The position numbers and the translations under genes were made by a program. Below the pieces are notes generated by a model. The model made no database searches. It had not been told where the DNA came from and saw nothing but the letters and a program-made list of their open reading frames with translations. DNA of 64,000 bases. Origin: Oikopleura dioica (Eukaryota > Animalia > Chordata). The DNA lies in NCBI GenBank assembly GCA_907165135.1, contig OU015567.1, positions 3,038,001 through 3,102,000 of the forward strand, given 5' to 3'. This document shows positions 52,284 to 64,000 of the stretch, piece by piece. Each line of letters begins with the position of its first letter. The stretch's first letter is position 1.

Positions 52284-54574
52284 CTACTTGAAGACATGAC
52301 GAGGTATCTGAACATTTTGATGACGGTATATTATTTGTAACAATTCTACCTTTGGTTCCAAAGACGCTTTTAGTCGTTCGCCAAGACTTCCTTTCTGCTT
52401 GATCAACTGAATGACACCCATGACGGGGATGCAAATCATGGAAGAAAGCGCCAAACACCAGCCAAGTCCTTCCGCCCAAAGAGGAAGAACTTCTTGGTTT
52501 TCGTACTTCATTCGTTCATACTTCGTCAGGCAGAGGGCGAAAATGGATGTTGTTGCAAGCGGAGTCAAGAACTTCCAGCAGTAGACGAAATAGCGCGAGC
52601 ATTTTTTACCTAGGTTCAAATTTATCATCTCCTTTTGCCTGAAAACTAACCAGTCATTCGTTCAACAGTTTGCAAGTACTTTTCGCCTCCATATCCCCAG
52701 CCGATCGCCACTGCTTCCCAAAACGACAGCCAGAGCAAAGCGAATCCAGATGCTCCAAAGTTGTCGAATATTTGAAAGGTATGAACTCCTCCTTTGGTGC
52801 AGAAAATCAAGCCGATCAGGAAGAAGCAGATTGTGACAAGAAGGGAGAATTTAGCACGGTGTCTCTAGAGTTATTTCTCAAGGATGGATTCATTTTTGGG
52901 TTAATTCACCTGTAGAGTTGGAGAAAGATCAGAAACAGCAGTGAGAAAACTCTCCATTCCTACCATTTGGCTTCCGGTTCCAAGAACAAGGATCATCGTA
53001 AAGAAAGCCACTGCCCAAACAGGACTGTGCGGCATCATCGTGATTCCCTTCGGATAGACCAAAAACGCCAAACCAGGGCCACTTGTCGCTACGTGCTCGA
53101 TGTCAATTCCACTCTCGCAGGACATGAAACCCAAGAAGGCGAAAACCGCGAAGCCGGCGAAGACTGAAGTGCCAGAGTTGACAAGAGAAAGGAGGATGGC
53201 ATCGCGGTAGCAGTTATTGTCGAACTTATTGTATGAACCGAGAGCTGTCAAAGCGCCAAGACCAATTGCATAGGAGAAGAAAATTTGAGTACCAGCGTCG
53301 ATCCAGATCTTAAAACTCTGTCAAAGATAAGTTTTTCAAAATCAAAATCACCTTCGTTGTCAATAATTTGCTCCAATCAGGCTTCAAGTAAAACGAAATT
53401 CCCTCGGCGGCACCTGGCAGCGTAATTGCCCGAATAAAAAGCGCCGATAGAATGATGTAAGGGTAGATGGCAGTGACCCAGGCTACTTTTCCGCTGCTCT
53501 TGACTCCTTTGCTCACGCTGAGCCAGCAAGTCAGCCAGGCAAAAGCCAAACAAGCGACTAGCTCCCAGCGCATTTCGCCTTGATCTTCGATGCGGTCGGT
53601 TTTCTGGAGCACACGATTCTCCCAAAAGTCTTGGACGGGTGTTCGAATGGCTAGAAATTCCGAAAGTTGTCGCTCGTCGAATGGTTCCGCGCAAATTCCT
53701 GGACATTTTTTGAAAACAAGGATGAGAATCTTTTTTTACCTGTATCATTCTCGAATAATCCACGCGAGGTTGTATGAGAGAAGCAGGTTGATTGATTGGA
53801 CCATGTATTGTCGCAAGTCTCCCAGGGAAGATCTGATGCCGTAAATGAGTTCACCAAGTAGAAGATCGCCCACGCGAGTACCATAATGTAGTAGATGTTG
53901 CAAAAACACACGCAAACGGCCGAACTGACGCCGATTCCTCGAAAGAGTGGGACAAGATCCCAGGCTCGGATTCCACCAGCTACAAATATTGATTGAATCA
54001 GAGCGCTCAATTTGGTATTTTACCTTTCATGAATTGCCCAAGCGAAAGTTCCAGAAAGAAGATCGGAATTCCACCAAAAACGCACATGATCAAATAAGGG
54101 ATGAAAAATGCGCCACCTCCATTTTTATAGCAAAGATAGGGGAAGCGCCAGACATTTCCCAAGCCAACTGCGAACGCGATGACCGCCAGAATGAATTCGG
54201 CTTTTCTCGACCATGTCTAAATTTCTCGTTAGAAGAATGTGATAAGATGCAAAAACAACGATTTATGAGGTCGATGAGAGGGGCGAGAGGTTGAAAATTA
54301 CTCTACTTCAGTGACGTTGTATTACTGTAATGAGGAATTCTCCTAGAGAATATGTTTTTTTTACCTGTCTGTTTGGAACTAAATCTTCGCAGTCTTCAAG
54401 CTTCTTCTGAAGAAGTCCTTCTGTCGATGTGATTCCATCGCTATCAATAAGTTTTAGGCACAAAATTCTCTACCTTACTGATGTCGCTTACGTAATCTGC
54501 GTGGAACTTCCAGAGCCAGATTCGTCCGAGCTGTTTCTCTTTTTTTCTGTTTCTGCTGTGTTGATCAGATCCAT
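52284..54574 (-). CDS. SLC6 sodium/chloride-dependent transporter, creatine transporter (SLC6A8)-like
   Basis: Motifs: [95 protein letters not shown]. The GQFMK and TM3 [11 protein letters not shown] signatures resemble vertebrate creatine transporter. ATG at 54574. Confidence 0.93.
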
Positions 54575-56601: not shown

Positions 56602-59600
56602 CTAGCCTTCATAGTTCACTGGATCTGCTGGAGCTTTCCAGAAGGTCTTGTTTTCAGCAAGGCACATGATGTGGTGGTCTGGAAAGTCCTGACCTTCGAG
56701 AGGAACAATGGCATTAGCGGCTGTCAGGAGGCACCAGTCTCGGCCCTTGGCTGCAATCCATTGAACATCCTTGAGACCTTAAATCTGCGTTTGAAAGATA
56801 AGACTAATAGAATTGAAACTTACCAGTAAGAATGACTTGGACATCATCGGATCCCATATTCTTTACAGGTTTTCCTCCCTTGAAGGTCCACGGAGTATCC
56901 TTGTCGACAAGCTGAGTGACCTCAAACTCAAAACCAGCATGAGTATATTTGGCAGCATCTCGGAAGTAAGCATCGCCAAGTCGGTAGACGTCAGTGGTAT
57001 CGACAAGGTCGACTCGAACTTCACCGCTTCGGAGTTTTTTCACGAAATCCATTCCGCAAACGTCTTTGGTCCAGAAGATGAAACCTTTGTAAAGCTCTTC
57101 TCTGGGGCTAACAAATTTGTTCTTTGATCGGAATTTGACTTGAAGCATGACGGAATCCTCGCCCTTGTATATGTATTTGACATTATTGCGCTGAATCAAA
57201 TCTTTAAAGAAAAAAGAATCTAGCGAAAATCGGACAGACAACGAGAAGATCCTTCATCAGAGTTAAAAAACTTACTCCTTTCCATTCCGCAAACTTAGTA
57301 GAGGAATCACATTCAAGGTCGGTTGGTCCGCACTTGAACCCCTTTCCGTTGGGAAGATTTGAACAGGACTCGTATGAGTGGCAGTAGTGGTTGCCAGTGT
57401 CACACTCATTCTCATCAACGCACTCGCCATCTTCACAGATAAACCCTAGAAGAATTTATTGACAATTTTCGCAAAAATAAATCTGTCATACCATTTTCAC
57501 ATTCTGGGAAGCAACCAGATGTCGGTGGGCAAGTTGGTGACTCCGTTGGCGGCTCCGTCGGTGGTTCCGTAGGTGGCTCAGTTGGTGGCTCAGGTGTTGT
57601 TGTTGCGCAAGGATTGTTCACTGGGTCTCTGCACTCGCAGGTGTATCCGGTTCCATCAGCAGTATTGACGCATCGCTCGTTGTCAGTGCAATCGTGGTCA
57701 GCACACGGGAGAGGTTCACCGGTTCCAGGTTCGCCTCCGGCTTCACAGCTGAAGCTTATATCTGGATTTCCGTTCGGAAACTCATAGCCACTAGATAGTT
57801 CTCCATTGTCACCAAAGCAGACGCTGTCCGGGTCAAGACCGGTCCAAGCCCAAGGAGCGTCGCATCCACCCCAGCCATCGTCGTCGCATACTATCCATCC
57901 TAATGTGCCGTTTTCACTTTCAGCTTCCCATCGGATTCGTCCGAGCCATTCGTGCTCGCTTGGACATTCATAAACATCCTTGCCGTTGTAGAGCTCGCCA
58001 CTTGCCACGCAAGTTGCAACACCGTTCCAGTCGACATACAGAGATGAACAACAGCCCAAGTCAGTTTTTGGAGTTCCTTTGAAGCAATCGGCGAGTCGGT
58101 TGTCCTCGTCTTCTCCGTCAAGACAATCTTTGAATCCATCGCAAAATTTGTGCTGGAAGATGGGTCGGATAACGTCGACAACGTCTGGCTCGAGACACAT
58201 GGATCGTGGCTCCATTGGGTGCGTATCGTGCTTTCCTTCGCAATAGAGAGCATAACCTTGCTCGGCATCGGTGGTGGTGAGGAGAGGATGAGGAGAGTAG
58301 CTTCGACCGTTGACAAGAGTGAAACCGCTGTACATAACGTTTGACGCTGGCTCAAATGGATGACCAGTGTCGATCCATTCGTTCTCGTTTATATCGCCGA
58401 CTGCGCCACCGGTGATGTAATCTGCCCAATCTGGTCTGTCCTGTTCGTGGAGATAGCCGATAGCGTGAAGGAACTCGTGGTGTATTCCACCGGCGGCAAG
58501 ACACCAGTTCGGAAGACGAAGTGCTTGCCATCCGGGTTGAATTCCGCTCACGCCATTAGTGCAACCGCTGCATACACCGACATATGACCAACAACCAGAG
58601 CCATTGGAGGTCTCACCGGCGATGTGTACACCAACGTCGTAGCTGAATTCAGGATCGTAGACGAATTTGAGGCATCCCATTGCAAGGGTGAAGTCTGCAA
58701 GCTCATCGTGGATTTGCTGCCAGCTTTCAGCAGGAACGGTGTCTTGGATTGCGTATGGAACTACGTATCGTCCATCAGAGTCAGTCACTGACCATTTCGT
58801 TGCCCAAGTGACCAATCCTCTTTCAGCTGGAGCCGTTTGGCTTGCGTTTTTGTCAATATTCAGTTTGTTAGCGTCGTAACCAAGCTTGACAAGGGCATCG
58901 ACTTGCCAGGGTGCAATGACGAGATCGCCATACTCGCCCTGATCACCGTGAGCGCCAGCGCCATTCTTAGTGGGAGTGTCTGGACGATCCCCTGCTTCAC
59001 GTTTAGCTTTCCATTTTTTCGCCGAGACCTGAAATTATTTTTTTCTGACTTCTTCTTAAAATTATATGCCCGATAAGTAGGGGGTGCACAGTGGGAAAAT
59101 TGATTTTTTTATCATCCTCTTATAGGGATGAATGATATATCGATGGAAAGCCTAAGATCCACTGATCATTTTAACATGTGACTTGGGGTCATCAAAGGTC
59201 ACCTGAGGTCACCTGAGGTCAAAATGCGAACTTTCTCAAAATCGATTTATATAAGGTTTTTTATGCATGAAATTGATCGCTGATGATCAATGATCATTTT
59301 AATCGCCATAAAAACAATATTCGGATTCATCCTGATCCATCAGAGGGAAAAAATAAAAATTGAAAATCGTAAATTTCACTGTCAAAACTCTTTTTCTCTC
59401 TTTTTTCTTTAAAAACCATAATTAAGTAAAAAACAAGGATAATTAAAATTTAAATATCAATGGGTATGGGTGGGGTTGGGGACGTAACTGAGATTGATCA
59501 ACTAAGAGTTCCAGGCCTTTGTCAAGCCCCTTAAAATTTAAAATCAAGGAACGGGGCTGAAACGGCCCGAAGGGCCGTCAAGCCCCTTAAAATTAAAAAT

Positions 59601-60355
59601 CAAGGAACGGGGCTGAAAAGGCCCGAAGGGCCGTCAAGCCCCTTAAAATTAAAAATCAAGGATAGGGGCTGAAACGGCCCGAAGGGCCGTCAAGCCCCCT
59701 AAAATTGAAAATCAAGGAACGGGGCTGAAACGGCCCTAAAAATCAAATCGGAAAAAAAATTTTCGTCTTCCAGGAGGATTCTTCCACCAATAAAGTCCTC
59801 CGGAGGACAAAAAATGACTCATGCTTAATCACATGATCAGGTTCAATTATTTATTGGGTAAAAACGGGTGCGAAAAAAAAAATGTTATTGTCGGGATTCG
59901 AACACCCGACTTGGCCGAAAAGTGATGATTTTTGACAAAGAATCGGCTCTAGAATTTTTTGCCGGAAAGTGCCGGATACCATTTTGGGGTCAAATTAAAG
60001 CTCTTTGTTTACTGTCTTAGATGCAATTAACATTTTTTATAACCTTTAATATCTCGGGAGAAATTTGCTAAAAACCCCTTTTCTGACCACGTGATTTAAC
60101 GGGTGAAAATGAGCATTTTTGAAAAGATGATAATTGAAAGGAATGATTGTTGGGTTATAACAAAGTCATTCAAGACTATAAAGTAACAAAAAAAGATACT
60201 TAGTTTTTTGACATTTTCCCACTGTGCACCCCCTACCGATAAGGAAACCCGAGATGATCAAATACAATTGTATTCTAAATATAATATCTCTCTGATGAAA
60301 ATTTTTTCAATATTTTTATACTCACAACGGACAAAATCGCGACAGACAGCTTCAT
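56602..60355 (-). CDS. Astacin-family (M12A) metalloprotease, gene 1: signal, propeptide, protease, LDLa, Cys-rich module, EGF, TEPP linker, Ca-EGF, ~185-aa unknown C-terminal domain
   Basis: Exon 1 MKLSVAILSV (60355-60326, gtgagt) splices in phase 0 to 59028. EYGDL aspartate-switch-like motif, HEFLHAIGYLHEQDRPD, Met-turn SNVMY, FCDGFKDCLDGEDE, CVDENEC. Stop TAG at 56602. Confidence 0.92.
59078..60235. mobile_element. 1158-bp non-autonomous hAT-like element in intron 1 of astacin gene 1
   Basis: Perfect 23-bp TIR TAGGGGGTGCACAGTGGGAAAAT. 8-bp TSD CCGATAAG at 59070-59077 and 60236-60243. Confidence 0.93.
59521..59736. repeat. 56-bp tandem repeat (~3.8 copies) inside the hAT-like element
   Basis: GTCAAGCCCC starts at 59521, 59577, 59633 and 59689. 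Each full unit carries a GGCCC-GAA-GGGCC hairpin. Confidence 0.9.
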
Positions 60356-60863
60356 TTTGAGGCTGACAATCTCTATTCCAATCGAGGTTTTATAGAAATC
60401 ATAATGCACTTGCGGCGCTAGAACATTAGGCTGCTAATCCACAAACAGCTTTTATACGGATTAATTGGAAGACAGCTGAAATTCGCACTCTCAAAATAAA
60501 GCTGTATATTAAACCGGGTGGATTTCGATTTCAGTTTAGGCGGAAATTAGACTTATTATAAAGATCTCCATAAAATAAAATGCATAAAAATATTTCATAA
60601 ATATGAATGCAAGAATTTTAAACAGAATATGAGTGGCCAATTCAAGCAGGGTGTCGACGTCAAAATTATAATCGATTTTTTTTATTCCCTGCTTCCCCGA
60701 GAATTATCCCGATTTCTGTCGAGTTTCCCCTTAGTGAAGTTTCATATCACAATATTTATACAAGTTGAACACGTTGAAGAGAACAAATGTATTCCAGAAG
60801 AATTAAATAAGTGTCATTTTATTAACCAAAAAGACATGAGTAGATTTTTAGAATAGGTAGAAT

Positions 60864-63352
60864 TTAACCTTCATAGTTCACCGGGTCTGCTGGAGCCTTC
60901 CAGAAGGTCTTATTTTCAGCAAGGCACATGATGTGGTGGTCTGGGTAATCTTGATTCTCAAGAGGAACGATAGCATTGGCGCCGGTCAAGAGGCACCAGT
61001 CTCGGCCCTTGGCTGGGATCCATTGAACATCCTTGAGTCCTAGAATCGTTTTGTTGAGAAATCTCGAAGAAAAAAGTAAGACTTACCGGTAAGAATGACC
61101 TGAACATCATCTGAGCCCATGTTCTTAGTAGGTTTACCGCCCTTGAAGGCCCATGGAGTATCCTTGTCGACGATCTGAGTGAGCTCAAACTCAAAACCAG
61201 CATGAGTATATTTAGCAGCATCTCGGAAATAGGCATCGCCCAGTCGGTAGACATCAGTGGTATCGACAAGATCGACTCGGACTTCGCCGCTTCGGAGCTT
61301 CTTCACAAAGTCCATGCCGCAAACGTCCTTGGTCCAGAAGATGAAACCCTTGTAAAGTTCCTCTCGTGGGTTGACCCACTTGTTCTTGGCTCGGAATTTG
61401 ACCTGGAGCATGACGGAATCTTCACCCTTGTAGATATATTTGATGTTGTTTCGCTAGAAAAAATGAGATTAGATAAATCGAAAACCAAAAAATAAATTGA
61501 CTTACTCCCTTCCATTCAGCGAATTTGGTGGATGAATCACATGTAAGATCAGTAGGTCCGCACTTGAATCCATTTCCATTTGGAAGATTGATGCAGGACT
61601 CGTATGAATGGCAGTGATGATTGCCAGTTGCACACTCATTCTCATCGACACACTCTCCGTCTTCGCAGGTGAATCCTAATGAATTTTAAAAAAAATTCAA
61701 AAAAAAGAGATCTTACCATCAGTGCACTCTGGGGAACAACCAGTAGTTGGTGGACAAGGTGTTGTTGTTGTAGTCGTCGTTGTAGTTGTCGTCGTAGTTG
61801 TCGTCGTTGTTGTTGAAGTCGTAGTAGTCGTCGTCGTTGTTGTAGTCGTAGTAGTCGATGTTGTCGTAGTAGTAGTTGTTGTAGTTGTTGTTGTGGTAGT
61901 TGTTGATGTGGTCGACGTTGTTGTTGTTGTTCCATCACAGGGGCTGTTGACTGGGTCTCTGCACTCACAGGTGTATCCACTTCCGTCAGCAGTGTTGACG
62001 CACCGTTCATTATCAGCGCAGTTGTGGTCAGCACATGGAAGAGGTTCGCCAGTTCCTGGCTGGCTTCCGGCTTCACAAGTAAAGCTTATATCCGGTACGC
62101 TTCCGAACGGGAAAGTGTAGCCACTGGAGAGCTCTCCGTTGTCACCGAAGCAAACGTTGTCTGGGTCAGGACCAGTCCATGCCCAAGGAGCATCACATCC
62201 ACCCCAGCCATCATCATCGCAGACAATCCATCCCAAGTCTGTTTCCCATCGGATTCTTCCGAGCCATTGATGATCACTTGGACATTCATAAAGGTCCTTG
62301 CCATTGTATGTGCCACATGCGACGCAAGACCCGATGCCGTTCCAGTTTACGTAAAGAGATGAACAGCAGCCAAGATCGGTTTTAGGGGCATCCTCGAAAC
62401 AGTTAGCAAGTCGGTTATCTTCGTCTTCTCCGTCGAGGCAGTCCGCAAAACCGTCACAGAATTTGTGCTGGAAGATGGGTCGAATAACATCGACAACATC
62501 AGGCTCAAGGCACTTGGATCGTGGTTCCATTGGATGAGTGTCTTGCTTGTTTTCGCAGTAGAGGGCGTATCCCTGCTCGGCATCGGTGGTTGTGAGGAGG
62601 GGATGAGGAGAGTAGCTTCGGCCGTTGACAAGGGTGAATCCGCTGTACATGACGTTTGAAGATGGTTCGAAGGGATGACCAGTGTCGATCCAATCACTCT
62701 CGCTGATATCTCCTACATCGCCACCGGTGATGTAATTGGCCCAATCTGGCCGATCCTGCTCGTGGAGATAGCCGATAGCGTGAAGGAACTCGTGGTGGAT
62801 TCCGCCGACGCTGAGGCACCAGTTAGGGAGTCGAAGTGCTTGCCAGCCTGGCTGAATTCCGCTCACGCCATTAGTACAGCCGCTGCAGACACCGACGTAT
62901 GACCAGCAACCAGAGCCGTTTGAGGTTTCACCAGCAATGTGGACACCGACGTCGTATGAGAAGGTTGGATCATAAACGAACTTAAGACAACCCATGGCAA
63001 GGGTGAAGTCTGCAAGCTCATCGTGAATCTGCTGCCAGCTCTCAGCAGGAACAGTGTCTTGGATGGCGTATGGAACGACGAATCGACCATCAGAGTCAGT
63101 CTCAGACCATTTCGTTGCCCAGGTGACCAAGCCTCTGCCAGTTGGGGCAGTATGGCCGGCGTTTTGGTCAACATTAAGTCTGTCAGCATCGTAGCCGAGC
63201 TTGACAAGAGCATCAACTTGCCAAGGGGCAACAACGAGATCGCCGTACTCACCCTGGTCACCGTGAGCTCCTTCTCCATTTTCATCGCTTGTGTCCGGTC
63301 GGTTAGCAATATCACCTGCTTTACGTTCACGTGCTCCTTTGGTTTGCGAGGC
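60864..63352 (-). CDS. Astacin-family metalloprotease module 2 (same architecture, poly-Thr linker); no signal-peptide exon of its own was found
   Basis: Paralogue of gene 1 with the same intron positions. HEFLHAIGYLH present, acceptor at 63353, stop TAA at 60864. Confidence 0.92.
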
Positions 63353-63735
63353 CTAAAAATTTTAAATTATCAATCGCTTGGCATTAAATTGATTTTAAAT
63401 TACTCTAGAAAAAACATTTTAGATTAAGAGGTTCACTGCCATTAAATTTATATTTGTGGTCGAAAAACGTCAGCTCATCAATTCAGGAGATATCGAATAC
63501 TATCTTTTATTAATGACCCATTTATCAATATTTTTTAGTTAATGTTCGACGACTGTTTAAAATGAGGGACTTTTTGTAATTTAAATTATTTTACTAGTAA
63601 CTTACTAGTAGTAAGGACAAATCTTTTCGTTAATCTGAATTCTATCAATTTCCTCAGAAAAAGCAACCCTATTTCAAATAGGCTATTTGATTACGGAGCA
63701 TGATTTTTTGAGGAAAAATACTGCGGCTCTCTTAC

Positions 63736-64000
63736 ATTACAAGTAGGTGGCTCAGTTGGTGGCTCAGTTGGTGGCTCAGTTGGTGGCTCAGTTGGAGGCT
63801 CAGTTGGTGGCTCAGTTGGTGGCTCAGTTGGTGGCTCAGTTGGAGGCTCAGTTGGTGGCTCAGTTGGAGGCTCAGTTGGGGGCTCAGTAGTAGTAGTTGT
63901 CGTTGTAGTCGTGGTTGTTGTTGTTGTTCCGTCGCAAGGGCTGTTGACTGGGTCTCTGCACTCACAGGTGTATCCAGTTCCATCAGCAGTGTTGACGCAT
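63736..64000 (-). CDS. 3' end of a third astacin-cluster module (EGF + Thr + 12x TEPP), truncated by the window edge
   Basis: CVNTADGTGYTCECRDPVNSPCDGTTT...(TEPP)12-TCN followed by gtaaga. The GGCTCAGT 12-mer occurs 12 times. Confidence 0.85.

What the first reader, a model, noticed from the sequence alone, without database searches (positions are those of the whole stretch)
63340..64000. Possible multi-protease polyprotein: upstream astacin module splices in phase into the propeptide of the next
Seen: module 3 ends (TEPP)12-TCN|gtaaga (phase 0, 63736). The next strong acceptor, tttttag|GCC at 63353, is also phase 0 and opens module 2 (ASQTKGARERKAGD...). The 383 nt between them contain neither the EGF and C-terminal exons that end genes 1 and 2, nor a signal-peptide exon like the MKLSVAILSV of gene 1. 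Inference: a single mRNA encodes at least two complete pro-astacin/LDLa/EGF units separated by a mucin stalk and a basic RERK site. That would be unusual for M12A proteases, which normally carry one catalytic domain.
Basis: partly seen in the sequence, partly recalled or inferred. Interest (0 to 1): 0.75.

Follow-up and report, generated by a model that had tools for sequence, protein, structure and literature searches.

The report
Three-protease astacin gene in Oikopleura
In the tiny marine tunicate Oikopleura dioica, a gene for a secreted "house" protease seems to have triplicated its core internally, so one message probably encodes three complete astacin proenzymes joined by mucin-like stalks; no transcript data could be checked.

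Summary
On the minus strand an astacin module ends in a (TEPP)12 stalk and TCN|GTAAGA (last exon base 63736, phase 0).

The window is Oikopleura dioica OKI2018_I69 chr2. The genes fit the oikosin-24 house-protease architecture.

Reading 8 kb past the window edge shows the full unit: one promoter and 10-codon signal exon, then a short module m4, a 367-nt spacer with the same CN|GTAAG...AG|GCC junction, m3, the 383-nt spacer, m2, and the family's usual EGF_CA and C-terminal exons. That is 1713 codons with no stop.

- m2 cannot start alone: an in-frame TAG sits directly upstream, there is no usable ATG, and the species' spliced leader has no ATG.
- Yet m2 and m3 are intact and strongly constrained (dS 0.39, dN/dS 0.06).
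- The two spacers are unalignable, and conservation starts and stops exactly at the splice sites.
- A paralogue (public model g5373) has the same junction across a 47-nt intron.

So a multi-module mRNA is the best reading (about 0.65), unproven without transcript data. RERK as a processing site is unsupported. Predicted multi-astacin proteins exist in public proteomes. Another first-stage note (s1-390129) flagged this same locus.

The parts
63736..64000 (-). 3' end of module m3: EGF-like motif, Thr14, (EPPT)12 stalk and Cys-Asn, then the phase-0 donor. The whole exon runs from window-equivalent 65349 to 63736 (L011 3349..1736), 538 codons.
   Evidence: TRF finds a 12-nt unit x12.2. Pfam Astacin 47.7 bits.
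63353..63735 (-). Inter-module intron i32, 383 nt, GTAAGA...TTTTTAG. Its last three bases, TAG, are an in-frame stop for module m2.
   Evidence: no signal-like mini-exon; 28% GC. It cannot be aligned to the other inter-module spacer (45% identity; Smith-Waterman score within the shuffle null).
61717..63352 (-). Module m2 exon (545 codons plus 1 base): propeptide, astacin catalytic domain (HEFLHAIGYLHEQDRPD), LDLa-like motif, Cys-rich central domain, EGF-like motif, Thr/Ser stalk and CPPTTGCSPECTD. It ends with the phase-1 donor G|GTAAGA.
   Evidence: m2 vs m3: 96% amino-acid identity, dS 0.39, dN/dS 0.058.
61506..61675 (-). EGF_CA exon of the same gene (phase 1 in, phase 0 out).
   Evidence: Pfam EGF_CA 18.7 bits, below the cut-off. 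dN/dS 0.018 against gene 1.
61087..61453 (-). First exon of the C-terminal domain (122 codons plus 1 base). No Pfam family.
   Evidence: dN/dS 0.038 against gene 1.
60864..61039 (-). Last exon, with the TAA stop at 60866..60864. AATAAA lies 41 nt downstream, at 60823..60818.
   Evidence: dN/dS 0.056 against gene 1.
60326..60355 (-). Signal exon of the separate downstream single-module gene 1 (MKLSVAILSV|GTGAGT). Included for comparison: this is what a real gene start looks like in this array.
60406..60424 (-). Promoter-proximal block GTTCTAGCGCCGCAAGTGC of gene 1, followed by TATAAAA. Its only other perfect copy in the genome lies upstream of the m4 signal exon (window-equivalent 67128-67146).
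57492..59028 (-). Module m1, the large exon of single-module gene 1. It serves as the reference for the ancestral one-module architecture.

Best explanation
**What it is.** One transcription unit on the minus strand, about 6.2 kb, running from window-equivalent 67063 to 60864. It encodes a pre-pro-protein of 1713 codons.

**Order of parts.**
- A 10-codon signal exon (MKLSTAILAT).
- Module m4, which lacks the central Cys-rich domain, with a short TEPP stalk.
- A phase-0 intron of 367 nt.
- Module m3 with a T14(EPPT)12 stalk.
- A phase-0 intron of 383 nt. This is the junction in the finding.
- Module m2 with a Thr/Ser stalk.
- An EGF_CA exon and an uncharacterised C-terminal domain of about 180 residues.

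Each module carries its own propeptide, an astacin catalytic domain with the zinc motif, and an LDLa-like motif.

**Family and origin.** The gene has the oikosin-24 (Oik24) house-protease architecture of Oikopleura dioica. It arose by internal tandem duplication of the module plus its upstream intron.

**How it probably works (inferred).** Zymogen activation at the conserved Arg before GLVTW in each module would cut the chain into three enzymes. Only the last would keep the C-terminal domain.

**Shown:** exon phases, intact frames, selective constraint, absence of starts and promoters before m2 and m3, and the astacin fold.
**Inferred:** that the introns are actually spliced this way, the signal-peptide cleavage, and the activation cuts.
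For: 1. **Geometry.** Donor AAT|GTAAGA and acceptor TTTTTAG|GCC are both phase 0. The seven exons sum to 5139 nt, or 1713 codons, with no stop.
2. **m2 cannot initiate.** TAG is in frame immediately upstream of its first codon. No ATG mini-exon with a hydrophobic peptide and a phase-0 donor lies in the spacer. The first in-frame ATG falls inside the catalytic domain, and the first ATG after the acceptor is out of frame. The O. dioica spliced leader, as printed in PMC6883708, contains no ATG.
3. **m2 and m3 are both maintained.** They are 96% identical in protein, with dS 0.39, dN 0.023 and dN/dS 0.058. Against m1 the ratio is 0.07-0.09. The 3' exons have dN/dS 0.043.
4. **Intron-like spacers.**
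 - The two spacers are at random similarity (45% identity; Smith-Waterman score 25 against a null of 22.6 +/- 3.0).
 - Ungapped identity between m2 and m3 jumps from 25-55% to 90% exactly at AG|G.
 - Identity between m3 and m4 falls right after AAT|GTAAG.
5. **Same junction elsewhere.** It occurs a second time (m4 to m3: SCN|GTAAGG ... TTTAAG|GCC). It occurs a third time in paralogue g5373, as ATCN|GTACGA, a 47-nt intron, then TTTTTAG|ACT TCA. The public AUGUSTUS model built with RNA-seq hints (P0007) joins those two exons.
6. **Two promoters for four modules.** The block GTTCTAGCGCCGC[AC]AGTGC plus a TATA box occurs perfectly only twice in 64 Mb. Both copies sit upstream of the two signal exons, none before m3 or m2.
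7. **Each module is a real astacin.** Pfam PF01400 scores 47-49 bits. The sequence matches 1AST across GCWSYVG and HExxHxxGxxHE. The AlphaFold model of m3 has pLDDT of about 80-98 over most of the catalytic domain (dipping to about 70 near residue 220) and matches astacin, HCE-1, ZHE1 and BMP1 at TM 0.65-0.71.
8. **Not a haplotig artefact.** The modules differ by about 9% in exons, have unrelated flanking spacers, and end in different stalk types.
Against: - **No transcript, CAGE or peptide data were available.** The public annotation of this locus could not be retrieved. Records of the window's own genome appear to be withheld, and the word search only sees proteins of 296-941 aa.
- **Long introns.** Introns of 367-383 nt are long for a genome whose median intron is 49 bp (PMC8008620).
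- **The m3 acceptor is a weaker AAG|G.** m3 also has an in-frame ATG 33 nt upstream (MRRLILKFIFK), preceded by CACTAG and by a TATAAA that ends 22 nt upstream of it, so m3 might start on its own.
- **Exon skipping is possible.** All junctions are phase 0, so the signal exon could splice directly to m3 or m2 and give one- or two-module isoforms.
- **Gene conversion** among array members could inflate the apparent constraint.
- **Relatives are single-module.** Those recovered from the Norwegian genome and from metagenome or transcriptome-like contigs have one module (P0001, P0003, P0004).
Confidence: 0.65

Rival explanations
1. One promoter with alternative splicing. The signal exon splices directly to the m2 acceptor (or to m3), skipping the upstream modules. 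The main product is then an ordinary single-module Oik24-type protease, and multi-module mRNAs are minor or absent.
For: The signal-exon donor and all three module acceptors are phase 0. MKLSTAILAT joined to ASQTKG would still read as a plausible signal peptide by inspection. The recovered single-module relatives show the one-module architecture.
Against: m3 and m4 are as constrained as m2, so they must be translated. Their phase-0 donors are incompatible with the phase-1 EGF_CA acceptor. They can therefore only continue into another module or end in unconserved read-through tails. Skipping would also require introns of 2.4-3.7 kb that contain whole 1.1-1.6 kb exons, in a genome with a 49-bp median intron.
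Confidence: 0.15
2. Separate cistrons. m4 ends by read-through and polyadenylation in the spacer. m3 starts at its own ATG (MRRLILKFIFK...) from an internal promoter, or after SL trans-splicing at CACTAG|ATG, operon-style. Only m3 to m2 would then be joined, or not even that.
For: m3 has an in-frame ATG 33 nt upstream of its acceptor. A TATAAA ends 22 nt before that ATG and an AG sits directly before it. ATTAAA is present in spacer i43. Per PMC6883708, an 'AG' acceptor immediately upstream is what marks an SL trans-splice site.
Against: This cannot apply to m2, the junction in the finding: TAG is in frame, there is no ATG, and the SL has no ATG. The MRRLILKFIFK hydrophobic core is short and broken by Lys. 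An open, ATG-containing 11-codon stretch is expected by chance about 10% of the time in 28%-GC sequence (my estimate). The family promoter block is absent. The read-through tails of m4 and m3 share nothing beyond the donor consensus.
Confidence: 0.12
3. m3 and/or m2 are untranslated leftovers of recent tandem duplication (dead modules), or artefacts of haplotype merging in the assembly.
For: HaploMerger2 was used on a 99-Mb primary assembly. Tandem arrays are prone to partial duplicates. There is no direct expression evidence.
Against: The frames of 538 and 545 codons are intact and all catalytic motifs are present. dN/dS is 0.058 at dS 0.39; a neutral copy would push the ratio towards 0.5. 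The flanking spacers are not allelic, being unalignable. The two modules have different stalk ends.
Confidence: 0.05

Closest known systems
Oikosin 24 family (Oik24a-f), O. dioica house proteins (Hosp et al. 2012, PMC3390340)
   Same: Same species and the same stated architecture: astacin-type Zn metalloprotease, LDLa and an EGF-like domain. The family was expanded by serial duplication, with some paralogues still adjacent (24c/d). The recovered O. dioica relatives P0002/P0003 are 50-65% identical over their best local alignments (the P0003 alignment covers only 5-6% of the query) and share the C-terminal domain.
   Different: Oik24a-f are reported as 70-92 kDa, which fits one catalytic module. 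Here three modules lie in one frame behind one signal exon (about 1713 residues). I could not map this locus to a named Oik24 member.
Oik24g/h (149 and 172 kDa) of the same family
   Same: Large mosaic members. Their best database hits are trypsin-like serine protease and ovochymase-like proteins, and the paper says all Oik24 paralogues carry the metalloprotease domain. That is precedent for more than one protease domain per chain in this family.
   Different: They combine different protease classes. Here the same astacin zymogen unit is repeated, each with its own propeptide.
Polyserases and ovochymases (several serine-protease domains in one polypeptide; from my own knowledge, not tested here)
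   Same: Several complete catalytic units translated from one mRNA and, at least for polyserase-1, separated by proteolytic processing.
   Different: A different catalytic class (S1, not M12A), and no mucin stalk linkers.
Predicted multi-Astacin proteins in public proteomes (P0102, P0130, P0176, P0170, P0132, P0155)
   Same: Two or three PF01400 stretches in one predicted chain.
   Different: They are distant in sequence and are uncharacterised automatic models. Some are clearly merged genes; P0155, for example, includes a transposase domain. None has the stalk-CN|propeptide junction.
Canonical astacins (crayfish astacin, hatching enzymes, BMP1/tolloid, meprins)
   Same: Zinc motif HExxHxxGxxHE..R.D, the GCWSYVG strand, the catalytic fold (TM 0.65-0.71), and the order of signal peptide, prosegment and catalytic domain (PMC9848320).
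   Different: The review describes one catalytic domain per chain. The Pfam match here covers only profile positions 6-106 of 189. The Met-turn reads SNVMYS rather than SIMHY.

Membership tests
Astacin / MEROPS M12A | Extended zinc-binding motif HExxHxxGxxHE followed by xRxDR | tested here: met
   HEFLHAIGYLHEQDRPD is present in m1-m4 and aligns to the motif of 1AST.
Astacin / MEROPS M12A | Profile match above the curated threshold (PF01400) | tested here: met
   46.6-48.9 bits against a cut-off of 22.5 for all four modules. Only profile positions 6-106 of 189 are matched.
Astacin / MEROPS M12A | Catalytic-domain fold | tested here: met
   In the AlphaFold model of m3 the catalytic part has pLDDT of about 80-98 over most of its length. 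Foldseek gives probability 1.0 and target-normalised TM 0.65-0.71 to 1AST, 3VTG, 3LQB and 3EDH.
Astacin / MEROPS M12A | Met-turn with the zinc-ligand Tyr (SIMHY) | tested here: inconclusive
   The modules read SNVMYSG. Met is present, but Tyr is at +1 instead of +2 (motif as given in PMC9848320).
Astacin / MEROPS M12A | Prosegment with an aspartate switch (FxGD-type) | tested here: inconclusive
   GEYGDL is conserved in all modules and relatives. The prosegment is modelled at pLDDT 33-62, so zinc capping cannot be seen.
Astacin / MEROPS M12A | Signal peptide preceding a single zymogen unit | tested here: not met
   One signal exon precedes m4 only. m3 and m2 have none, and three zymogen units share one frame. 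This is the respect in which the gene is a variant.
Oikosin 24 (Oik24) | ZnMc + LDLa + EGF-like architecture in an O. dioica secreted protein | tested here: met
   Astacin plus a weak LDLa hit (16.7 bits, below the 24.1 cut-off) plus an EGF-type Cys pattern and an EGF_CA exon. The species is confirmed by P0007's source name and contig length and by the assembly statistics.
Oikosin 24 (Oik24) | Orthology to a named member (HE774614-HE774621) | not testable with these tools
   Accessions cannot be fetched. The closest Norwegian proteins recovered are only 50-65% identical over their local alignments.
Oikosin 24 (Oik24) | [quoted passage not shown] | not testable with these tools
   Known only from PMC3390340, for the Norwegian paralogues.
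Multi-catalytic protease polyprotein | Two or more complete zymogen units in one open frame after splicing | tested here: met
   Phases are 0/0 at both inter-module introns. The total is 1713 codons with no stop.
Multi-catalytic protease polyprotein | An mRNA that joins the units | not testable with these tools
   No transcript data. Scans of metagenome/metatranscriptome contigs for the junction peptide and for relatives found nothing.
Multi-catalytic protease polyprotein | Proteolytic separation of the units | not tested
   Inferred from the conserved Arg before GLVTW in every module.

The most novel reading that the evidence does not exclude
A self-dismantling protease polyprotein. One mRNA in the giant house-secreting cells yields three astacin zymogens strung on O-glycosylated stalks. 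Each activation cut at R|GLVTW severs the chain. Two enzymes are released, each carrying the next module's propeptide on its stalk, and only the last stays attached to the C-terminal (possibly house-anchoring) domain. The Cys-Asn at every junction would give a spliced-in N-glycan sequon and a free thiol. This would be a way to set fixed enzyme ratios and placement in an extracellular machine.
Probability: 0.3. Interest if true: 0.6.

Novelty: new variant of a known kind. Interest (0 to 1): 0.48.

Why it matters
Astacins are described as having one signal peptide, one prosegment and one catalytic domain per chain (PMC9848320). A constrained three-zymogen gene would be a clean natural example of a protease family gaining dosage or new products by duplicating an exon together with its intron, rather than the whole gene. 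It sits in a species whose filter-feeding house depends on this fast-evolving family. It also gives a ready-made evolutionary test case. Here the splice junctions are the only conserved parts of two introns that have otherwise diverged completely. Practically, it warns that tandem Oik24 models without signal peptides may be internal modules, not separate genes. In the 2012 study, SignalP scored 24a as positive and at least 24b-d as negative in the rows I could read.

Tried and rejected
**Searches that found nothing or could not decide**
- **Public gene model for the locus.** Two word searches only see proteins of 296-941 aa and returned the same eight proteins. The full HMMER search of representatives listed no protein from this locus. 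Exact look-ups of P0007 and of the m3 ORF found nothing. The window's own genome seems to be withheld, so these blanks say nothing.
- **Spliced junction in other data.** A back-translated pattern for CNASQTKGARE in JGI metagenome/metatranscriptome contigs gave 0 hits. A search for related loci there gave no relatives.
- **Other adjacent paralogue pairs** (C5:5.358/5.361 Mb, C1:12.307 Mb, C4:4.127 Mb). The C5 pair are two ORFs, each with its own signal peptide. C4 is a single ORF and C1 gave only one partial ORF. No second multi-module locus was found.
- **Norwegian loci.** The P0003 locus is single-module and the P0002 model is cut off by an N gap in its contig.
- **Tree to date the junction.** Relationships among m1, m4, (m2,m3), g5373 and two other paralogues are unresolved.
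- **C-terminal domain.** No Pfam hit. The AlphaFold model of P0003 failed at pLDDT 44.

**Readings rejected**
- A hidden signal exon in the spacer.
- An SL-supplied start codon.
- An assembly or haplotig artefact.
- RERK as a furin-type site.

**Not done**
- Exons were handled one by one, by reference.
Full report
**1. Observation**

All features lie on the minus strand.
- Window 63999..63736 reads through an EGF-like motif, Thr14, twelve EPPT units and Cys-Asn. It then meets GTAAGA. Tandem Repeats Finder gives a 12-nt unit, 12.2 copies and 94% matches at 63742-63888.
- After 383 nt (63735..63353, 28% GC), TTTTTAG|GCC TCG CAA... opens a frame reading ASQTKGARERKAGD. That frame continues for 545 codons.
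- Both sites are phase 0.
- The spacer holds six ATGs. None opens a hydrophobic mini-exon with a phase-0 GT donor. The spacer contains no EGF or C-terminal exon.

**2. Where we are**

- The window is G000:C5:3038001-3102000 of a 64.28-Mb, 19-contig genome.
- The word search returned a protein named Oidioi.mRNA.OKI2018_I69.chr2.g5373 on a contig of 16,158,756 bases, which is the length of C5.
- The assembly paper gives 64.3 Mb in 19 scaffolds, a median intron of 49 bp and AUGUSTUS models built with RNA-seq hints (PMC8008620).
- So this is chromosome 2 of Oikopleura dioica from Okinawa.
- The proteins match the description of the oikosin-24 family: house proteins with an astacin-type metalloprotease, LDLa and EGF-like domains. 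[quoted passage not shown] Members 24a-f are 70-92 kDa. Members 24g/h are 149 and 172 kDa with best hits to trypsin-like serine proteases (PMC3390340).

**3. The whole unit**

I fetched the next 8 kb (L011 = window 62001-72000). Positions beyond 64000 are window-equivalent; subtract 62000 for L011.

| Element | Position (minus strand) | Notes |
|---|---|---|
| Promoter block + TATA | 67146..67128 | GTTCTAGCGCCGCCAGTGC |
| Signal exon | 67063..67034 | MKLSTAILAT, donor GTAAGT |
| Intron | 168 nt | |
| Module m4 | 66865..65717 | 383 codons; lacks the central Cys-rich domain; ends (TEPP)n-SCN, donor GTAAGG |
| Spacer i43 | 65716..65350 | 367 nt |
| Module m3 | 65349..63736 | 538 codons; starts TTTAAG, then GCC (ASQTKGARERQ) |
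| Spacer i32 | 63735..63353 | 383 nt; the junction in the finding |
| Module m2 | 63352..61717 | Ends with the phase-1 donor G, then GTAAGA |
| EGF_CA exon | 61675..61506 | Preceded by a 41-nt intron |
| C-terminal exon 1 | 61453..61087 | Preceded by a 52-nt intron |
| C-terminal exon 2 | 61039..60864 | Preceded by a 47-nt intron; TAA stop; AATAAA 41 nt downstream |

The exons sum to 5139 nt, or 1713 codons, with no stop.

Downstream lies a separate single-module gene 1. It has its own promoter block, a signal exon at 60355..60326, module m1 at 59028..57492, and the same 3' exons.

**4. Are the modules real astacins?**

- All four hit PF01400 at 47-49 bits against a cut-off of 22.5. The LDLa hit is weak.
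- They align to crayfish astacin across GCWSYVG and HExxHxxGxxHE.
- An AlphaFold model of m3 (mean pLDDT 74.6; about 80-98 over most of the catalytic part) matches astacin, medaka HCE-1, zebrafish ZHE1 and BMP1 at target-normalised TM 0.65-0.71.
- The Met-turn reads SNVMYS rather than SIMHY. The prosegment (GEYGDL, resembling the FxGD aspartate switch) is modelled with low confidence. Those two features stay open.

**5. Evidence that the junction is a working intron**

(a) *m2 cannot start by itself.*
- The three bases before its first codon are TAG, in frame.
- The spacer offers no usable ATG.
- The first ATG after the acceptor is out of frame, and the first in-frame one lies inside the catalytic domain.
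- The species' spliced leader, as printed in PMC6883708, contains no ATG.

(b) *m2 and m3 are nevertheless both maintained.*
- They share 96% amino-acid identity, with dS 0.39, dN 0.023 and dN/dS 0.058. The ratios are 0.07-0.09 against m1 and 0.18-0.20 against m4.
- The 3' exons behind m2 have dN/dS 0.043 against gene 1.
- If one copy were drifting, the pairwise ratio would move towards 0.5.

(c) *The two spacers share nothing.*
- Global identity is 45%. No blastn hit reaches significance. The Smith-Waterman score is 25 against a shuffle null of 22.6 +/- 3.0.
- Ungapped identity between m2 and m3 rises from 25-55% to 90% exactly at AG|G.
- Identity between m3 and m4 collapses just after AAT|GTAAG.
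- Cys-Asn before the donor is kept, with a synonymous TGT/TGC change in the paralogue. The read-through tails (VREPQYF, VRNPHFL, VRVSAKN) are unrelated.

(d) *The junction exists three times.*
- It occurs at m4>m3, at m3>m2, and in the paralogue at C5:5.337 Mb.
- There a 5' exon (signal/anchor, EGF, Thr stalk, ATCN) meets GTACGA, a typical 47-nt intron, then TTTTTAG|ACT TCA ACT (TSTTKWKRAR, the propeptide).
- The public model P0007 joins these two exons.

(e) *Promoters.*
- The promoter-proximal block occurs perfectly only twice in the genome.
- Both copies are upstream of the two signal exons. None precedes m3 or m2.

(f) *Not a haplotype-merging artefact.*
- The modules differ by about 9% in their exons.
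- Their flanking spacers are unrelated.
- Their stalk ends are of different types.

**6. What remains open**

- I had no transcript, CAGE or peptide data.
- The public annotation of the locus could not be reached. The word search sees only 296-941 aa. Records of this genome seem to be withheld. Exact look-ups found nothing.
- Scans of metagenome contigs for the spliced junction peptide and for relatives were empty.
- Every exon was handled by reference.
- All junctions are phase 0, so the signal exon could in principle splice straight to m3 or m2.
- That would not explain the constraint on m3 and m4. Their phase-0 donors cannot join the phase-1 EGF_CA exon. They can only continue into another module or stop in unconserved read-through.
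- For the m4>m3 junction alone there is a further rival. An in-frame ATG lies 33 nt upstream of the m3 acceptor (MRRLILKFIFK). AG sits directly before it and a TATAAA ends 22 nt upstream. The acceptor there is the weaker AAG.
- I estimate that such an open, ATG-containing stretch arises by chance about one time in ten in sequence this AT-rich. Its hydrophobic core is short and broken by Lys.
- Gene conversion within the array could exaggerate the measured constraint. However, dS of 0.39-1.1 argues that conversion is not recent.

**7. Mechanism proposed**

The steps below are inferred, not shown.
- The signal peptide is cleaved after VSA.
- The chain is heavily O-glycosylated on its TEPP and Thr stalks.
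- Each module is a latent zymogen.
- Activation at the conserved Arg before GLVTW ([TKA][GE]R|GLVTW in every module, about nine residues before the conserved Trp) removes each prosegment. This necessarily severs the chain.
- The products would be m4 with its stalk and the m3 prosegment, m3 with its stalk and the m2 prosegment, and m2 with the EGF_CA and C-terminal domain.
It does not fit a furin-type pattern, so I do not take it as the processing site.

**8. Origin**

- Single-module relatives are common (P0001, P0003, P0004, gene 1).
- In them the stalk runs on into C-x-C-x-P-x-C and the EGF_CA exon. One paralogue reads ...PPTCNCDPACTDG.
- In m3, m4 and g5373 the exon stops right after that first Cys-Asn, at a donor.
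- The simplest history is a two-module ancestor with this junction, followed by unequal crossing-over in the EGF/stalk region that produced m3 and m2.
- The tree of catalytic domains does not resolve the order of events.

**9. Comparison and novelty**

- The catalytic units are astacins, and the gene has the Oik24 architecture.
- The variant feature is three zymogen units behind one signal exon.
- This is not without precedent. The same family has members of 149-172 kDa whose best hits are trypsin-like serine proteases. Polyserases and ovochymases do the same with serine proteases (my knowledge). Automatic models with two or three Astacin domains exist in public proteomes, some obviously merged.
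- The astacin review describes the core architecture as one signal peptide, one prosegment and one catalytic domain. A term search of it found no discussion of several catalytic domains in one chain.
- I rate it a new variant of a known kind, of moderate interest, with the decisive test being a simple look at existing RNA-seq.
- Another first-stage note on the adjoining window (s1-390129) flagged the same array as a polyprotein. My extension confirms three modules in frame.

Noticed in passing
window 63736/63352; L011 3717/3349; L016 about 4720/4680: If spliced, every junction creates an N-x-S glycosylation sequon across the exon border (SCN|ASQ, TCN|ASQ, TCN|TST). It also leaves a conserved, apparently unpaired Cys just before it.
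   Followed up: partly
G000:C5:5337122-5338939 (L016 3119-5113, minus strand): Paralogue g5373 keeps an open catalytic domain with HHEFLHALGFLHEEDRPD, but the public model P0007 splices that domain out. The domain sits on a long branch (0.30 against 0.01-0.05 for m1-m4), and its Met-turn Tyr is replaced (TLMKTG). The protein ends in a ShK domain instead of the family's C-terminal domain.
   Followed up: partly
window 60406-60424 and L011 5128-5146: A 19-nt block, GTTCTAGCGCCGC[AC]AGTGC, lies about 25 nt upstream of a TATA box. It is perfect only at these two sites in the 64-Mb genome, with six two-mismatch copies elsewhere. It may be a family-specific promoter element.
   Followed up: partly
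window about 59530-59760 (inside gene 1 intron 1, 59029-60325): About four tandem copies of a unit of roughly 60 nt with a GC-rich hairpin (GGGGCTTGACGGCCCTTCGGGCCGTTTCAGCCCC). They account for part of this unusually long 1297-nt intron.
   Followed up: no
L011 7175-9391, plus strand (window-equivalent 69175-71391): A 739-residue ORF, divergent from the astacin gene. It has four or five repeats of a Cys-containing domain of about 150 residues, separated by poly-Thr stalks. The only hit is a sub-threshold Pfam Mucin match, and it looks like another house/mucin-type protein.
   Followed up: partly
window 61453-61087 plus 61039-60867 (and 57190-56610 in gene 1): The conserved C-terminal domain of the family, about 180 residues, has no Pfam match. 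An AlphaFold model of relative P0003 failed at pLDDT 44, so the fold and function are unknown.
   Followed up: partly
many loci, e.g. C1:3748278-3748747, C4:13106631-13106846, C5:1471424-1471885: The 12-nt TEPP-coding repeat of the stalk recurs at dozens of places in the genome. It is presumably a common linker in secreted proteins of this species.
   Followed up: no
window about 52300-54200, minus strand: Exons of an SLC6-type sodium:neurotransmitter symporter, recognised by eye from [22 protein letters not shown]. Not examined.
   Followed up: no
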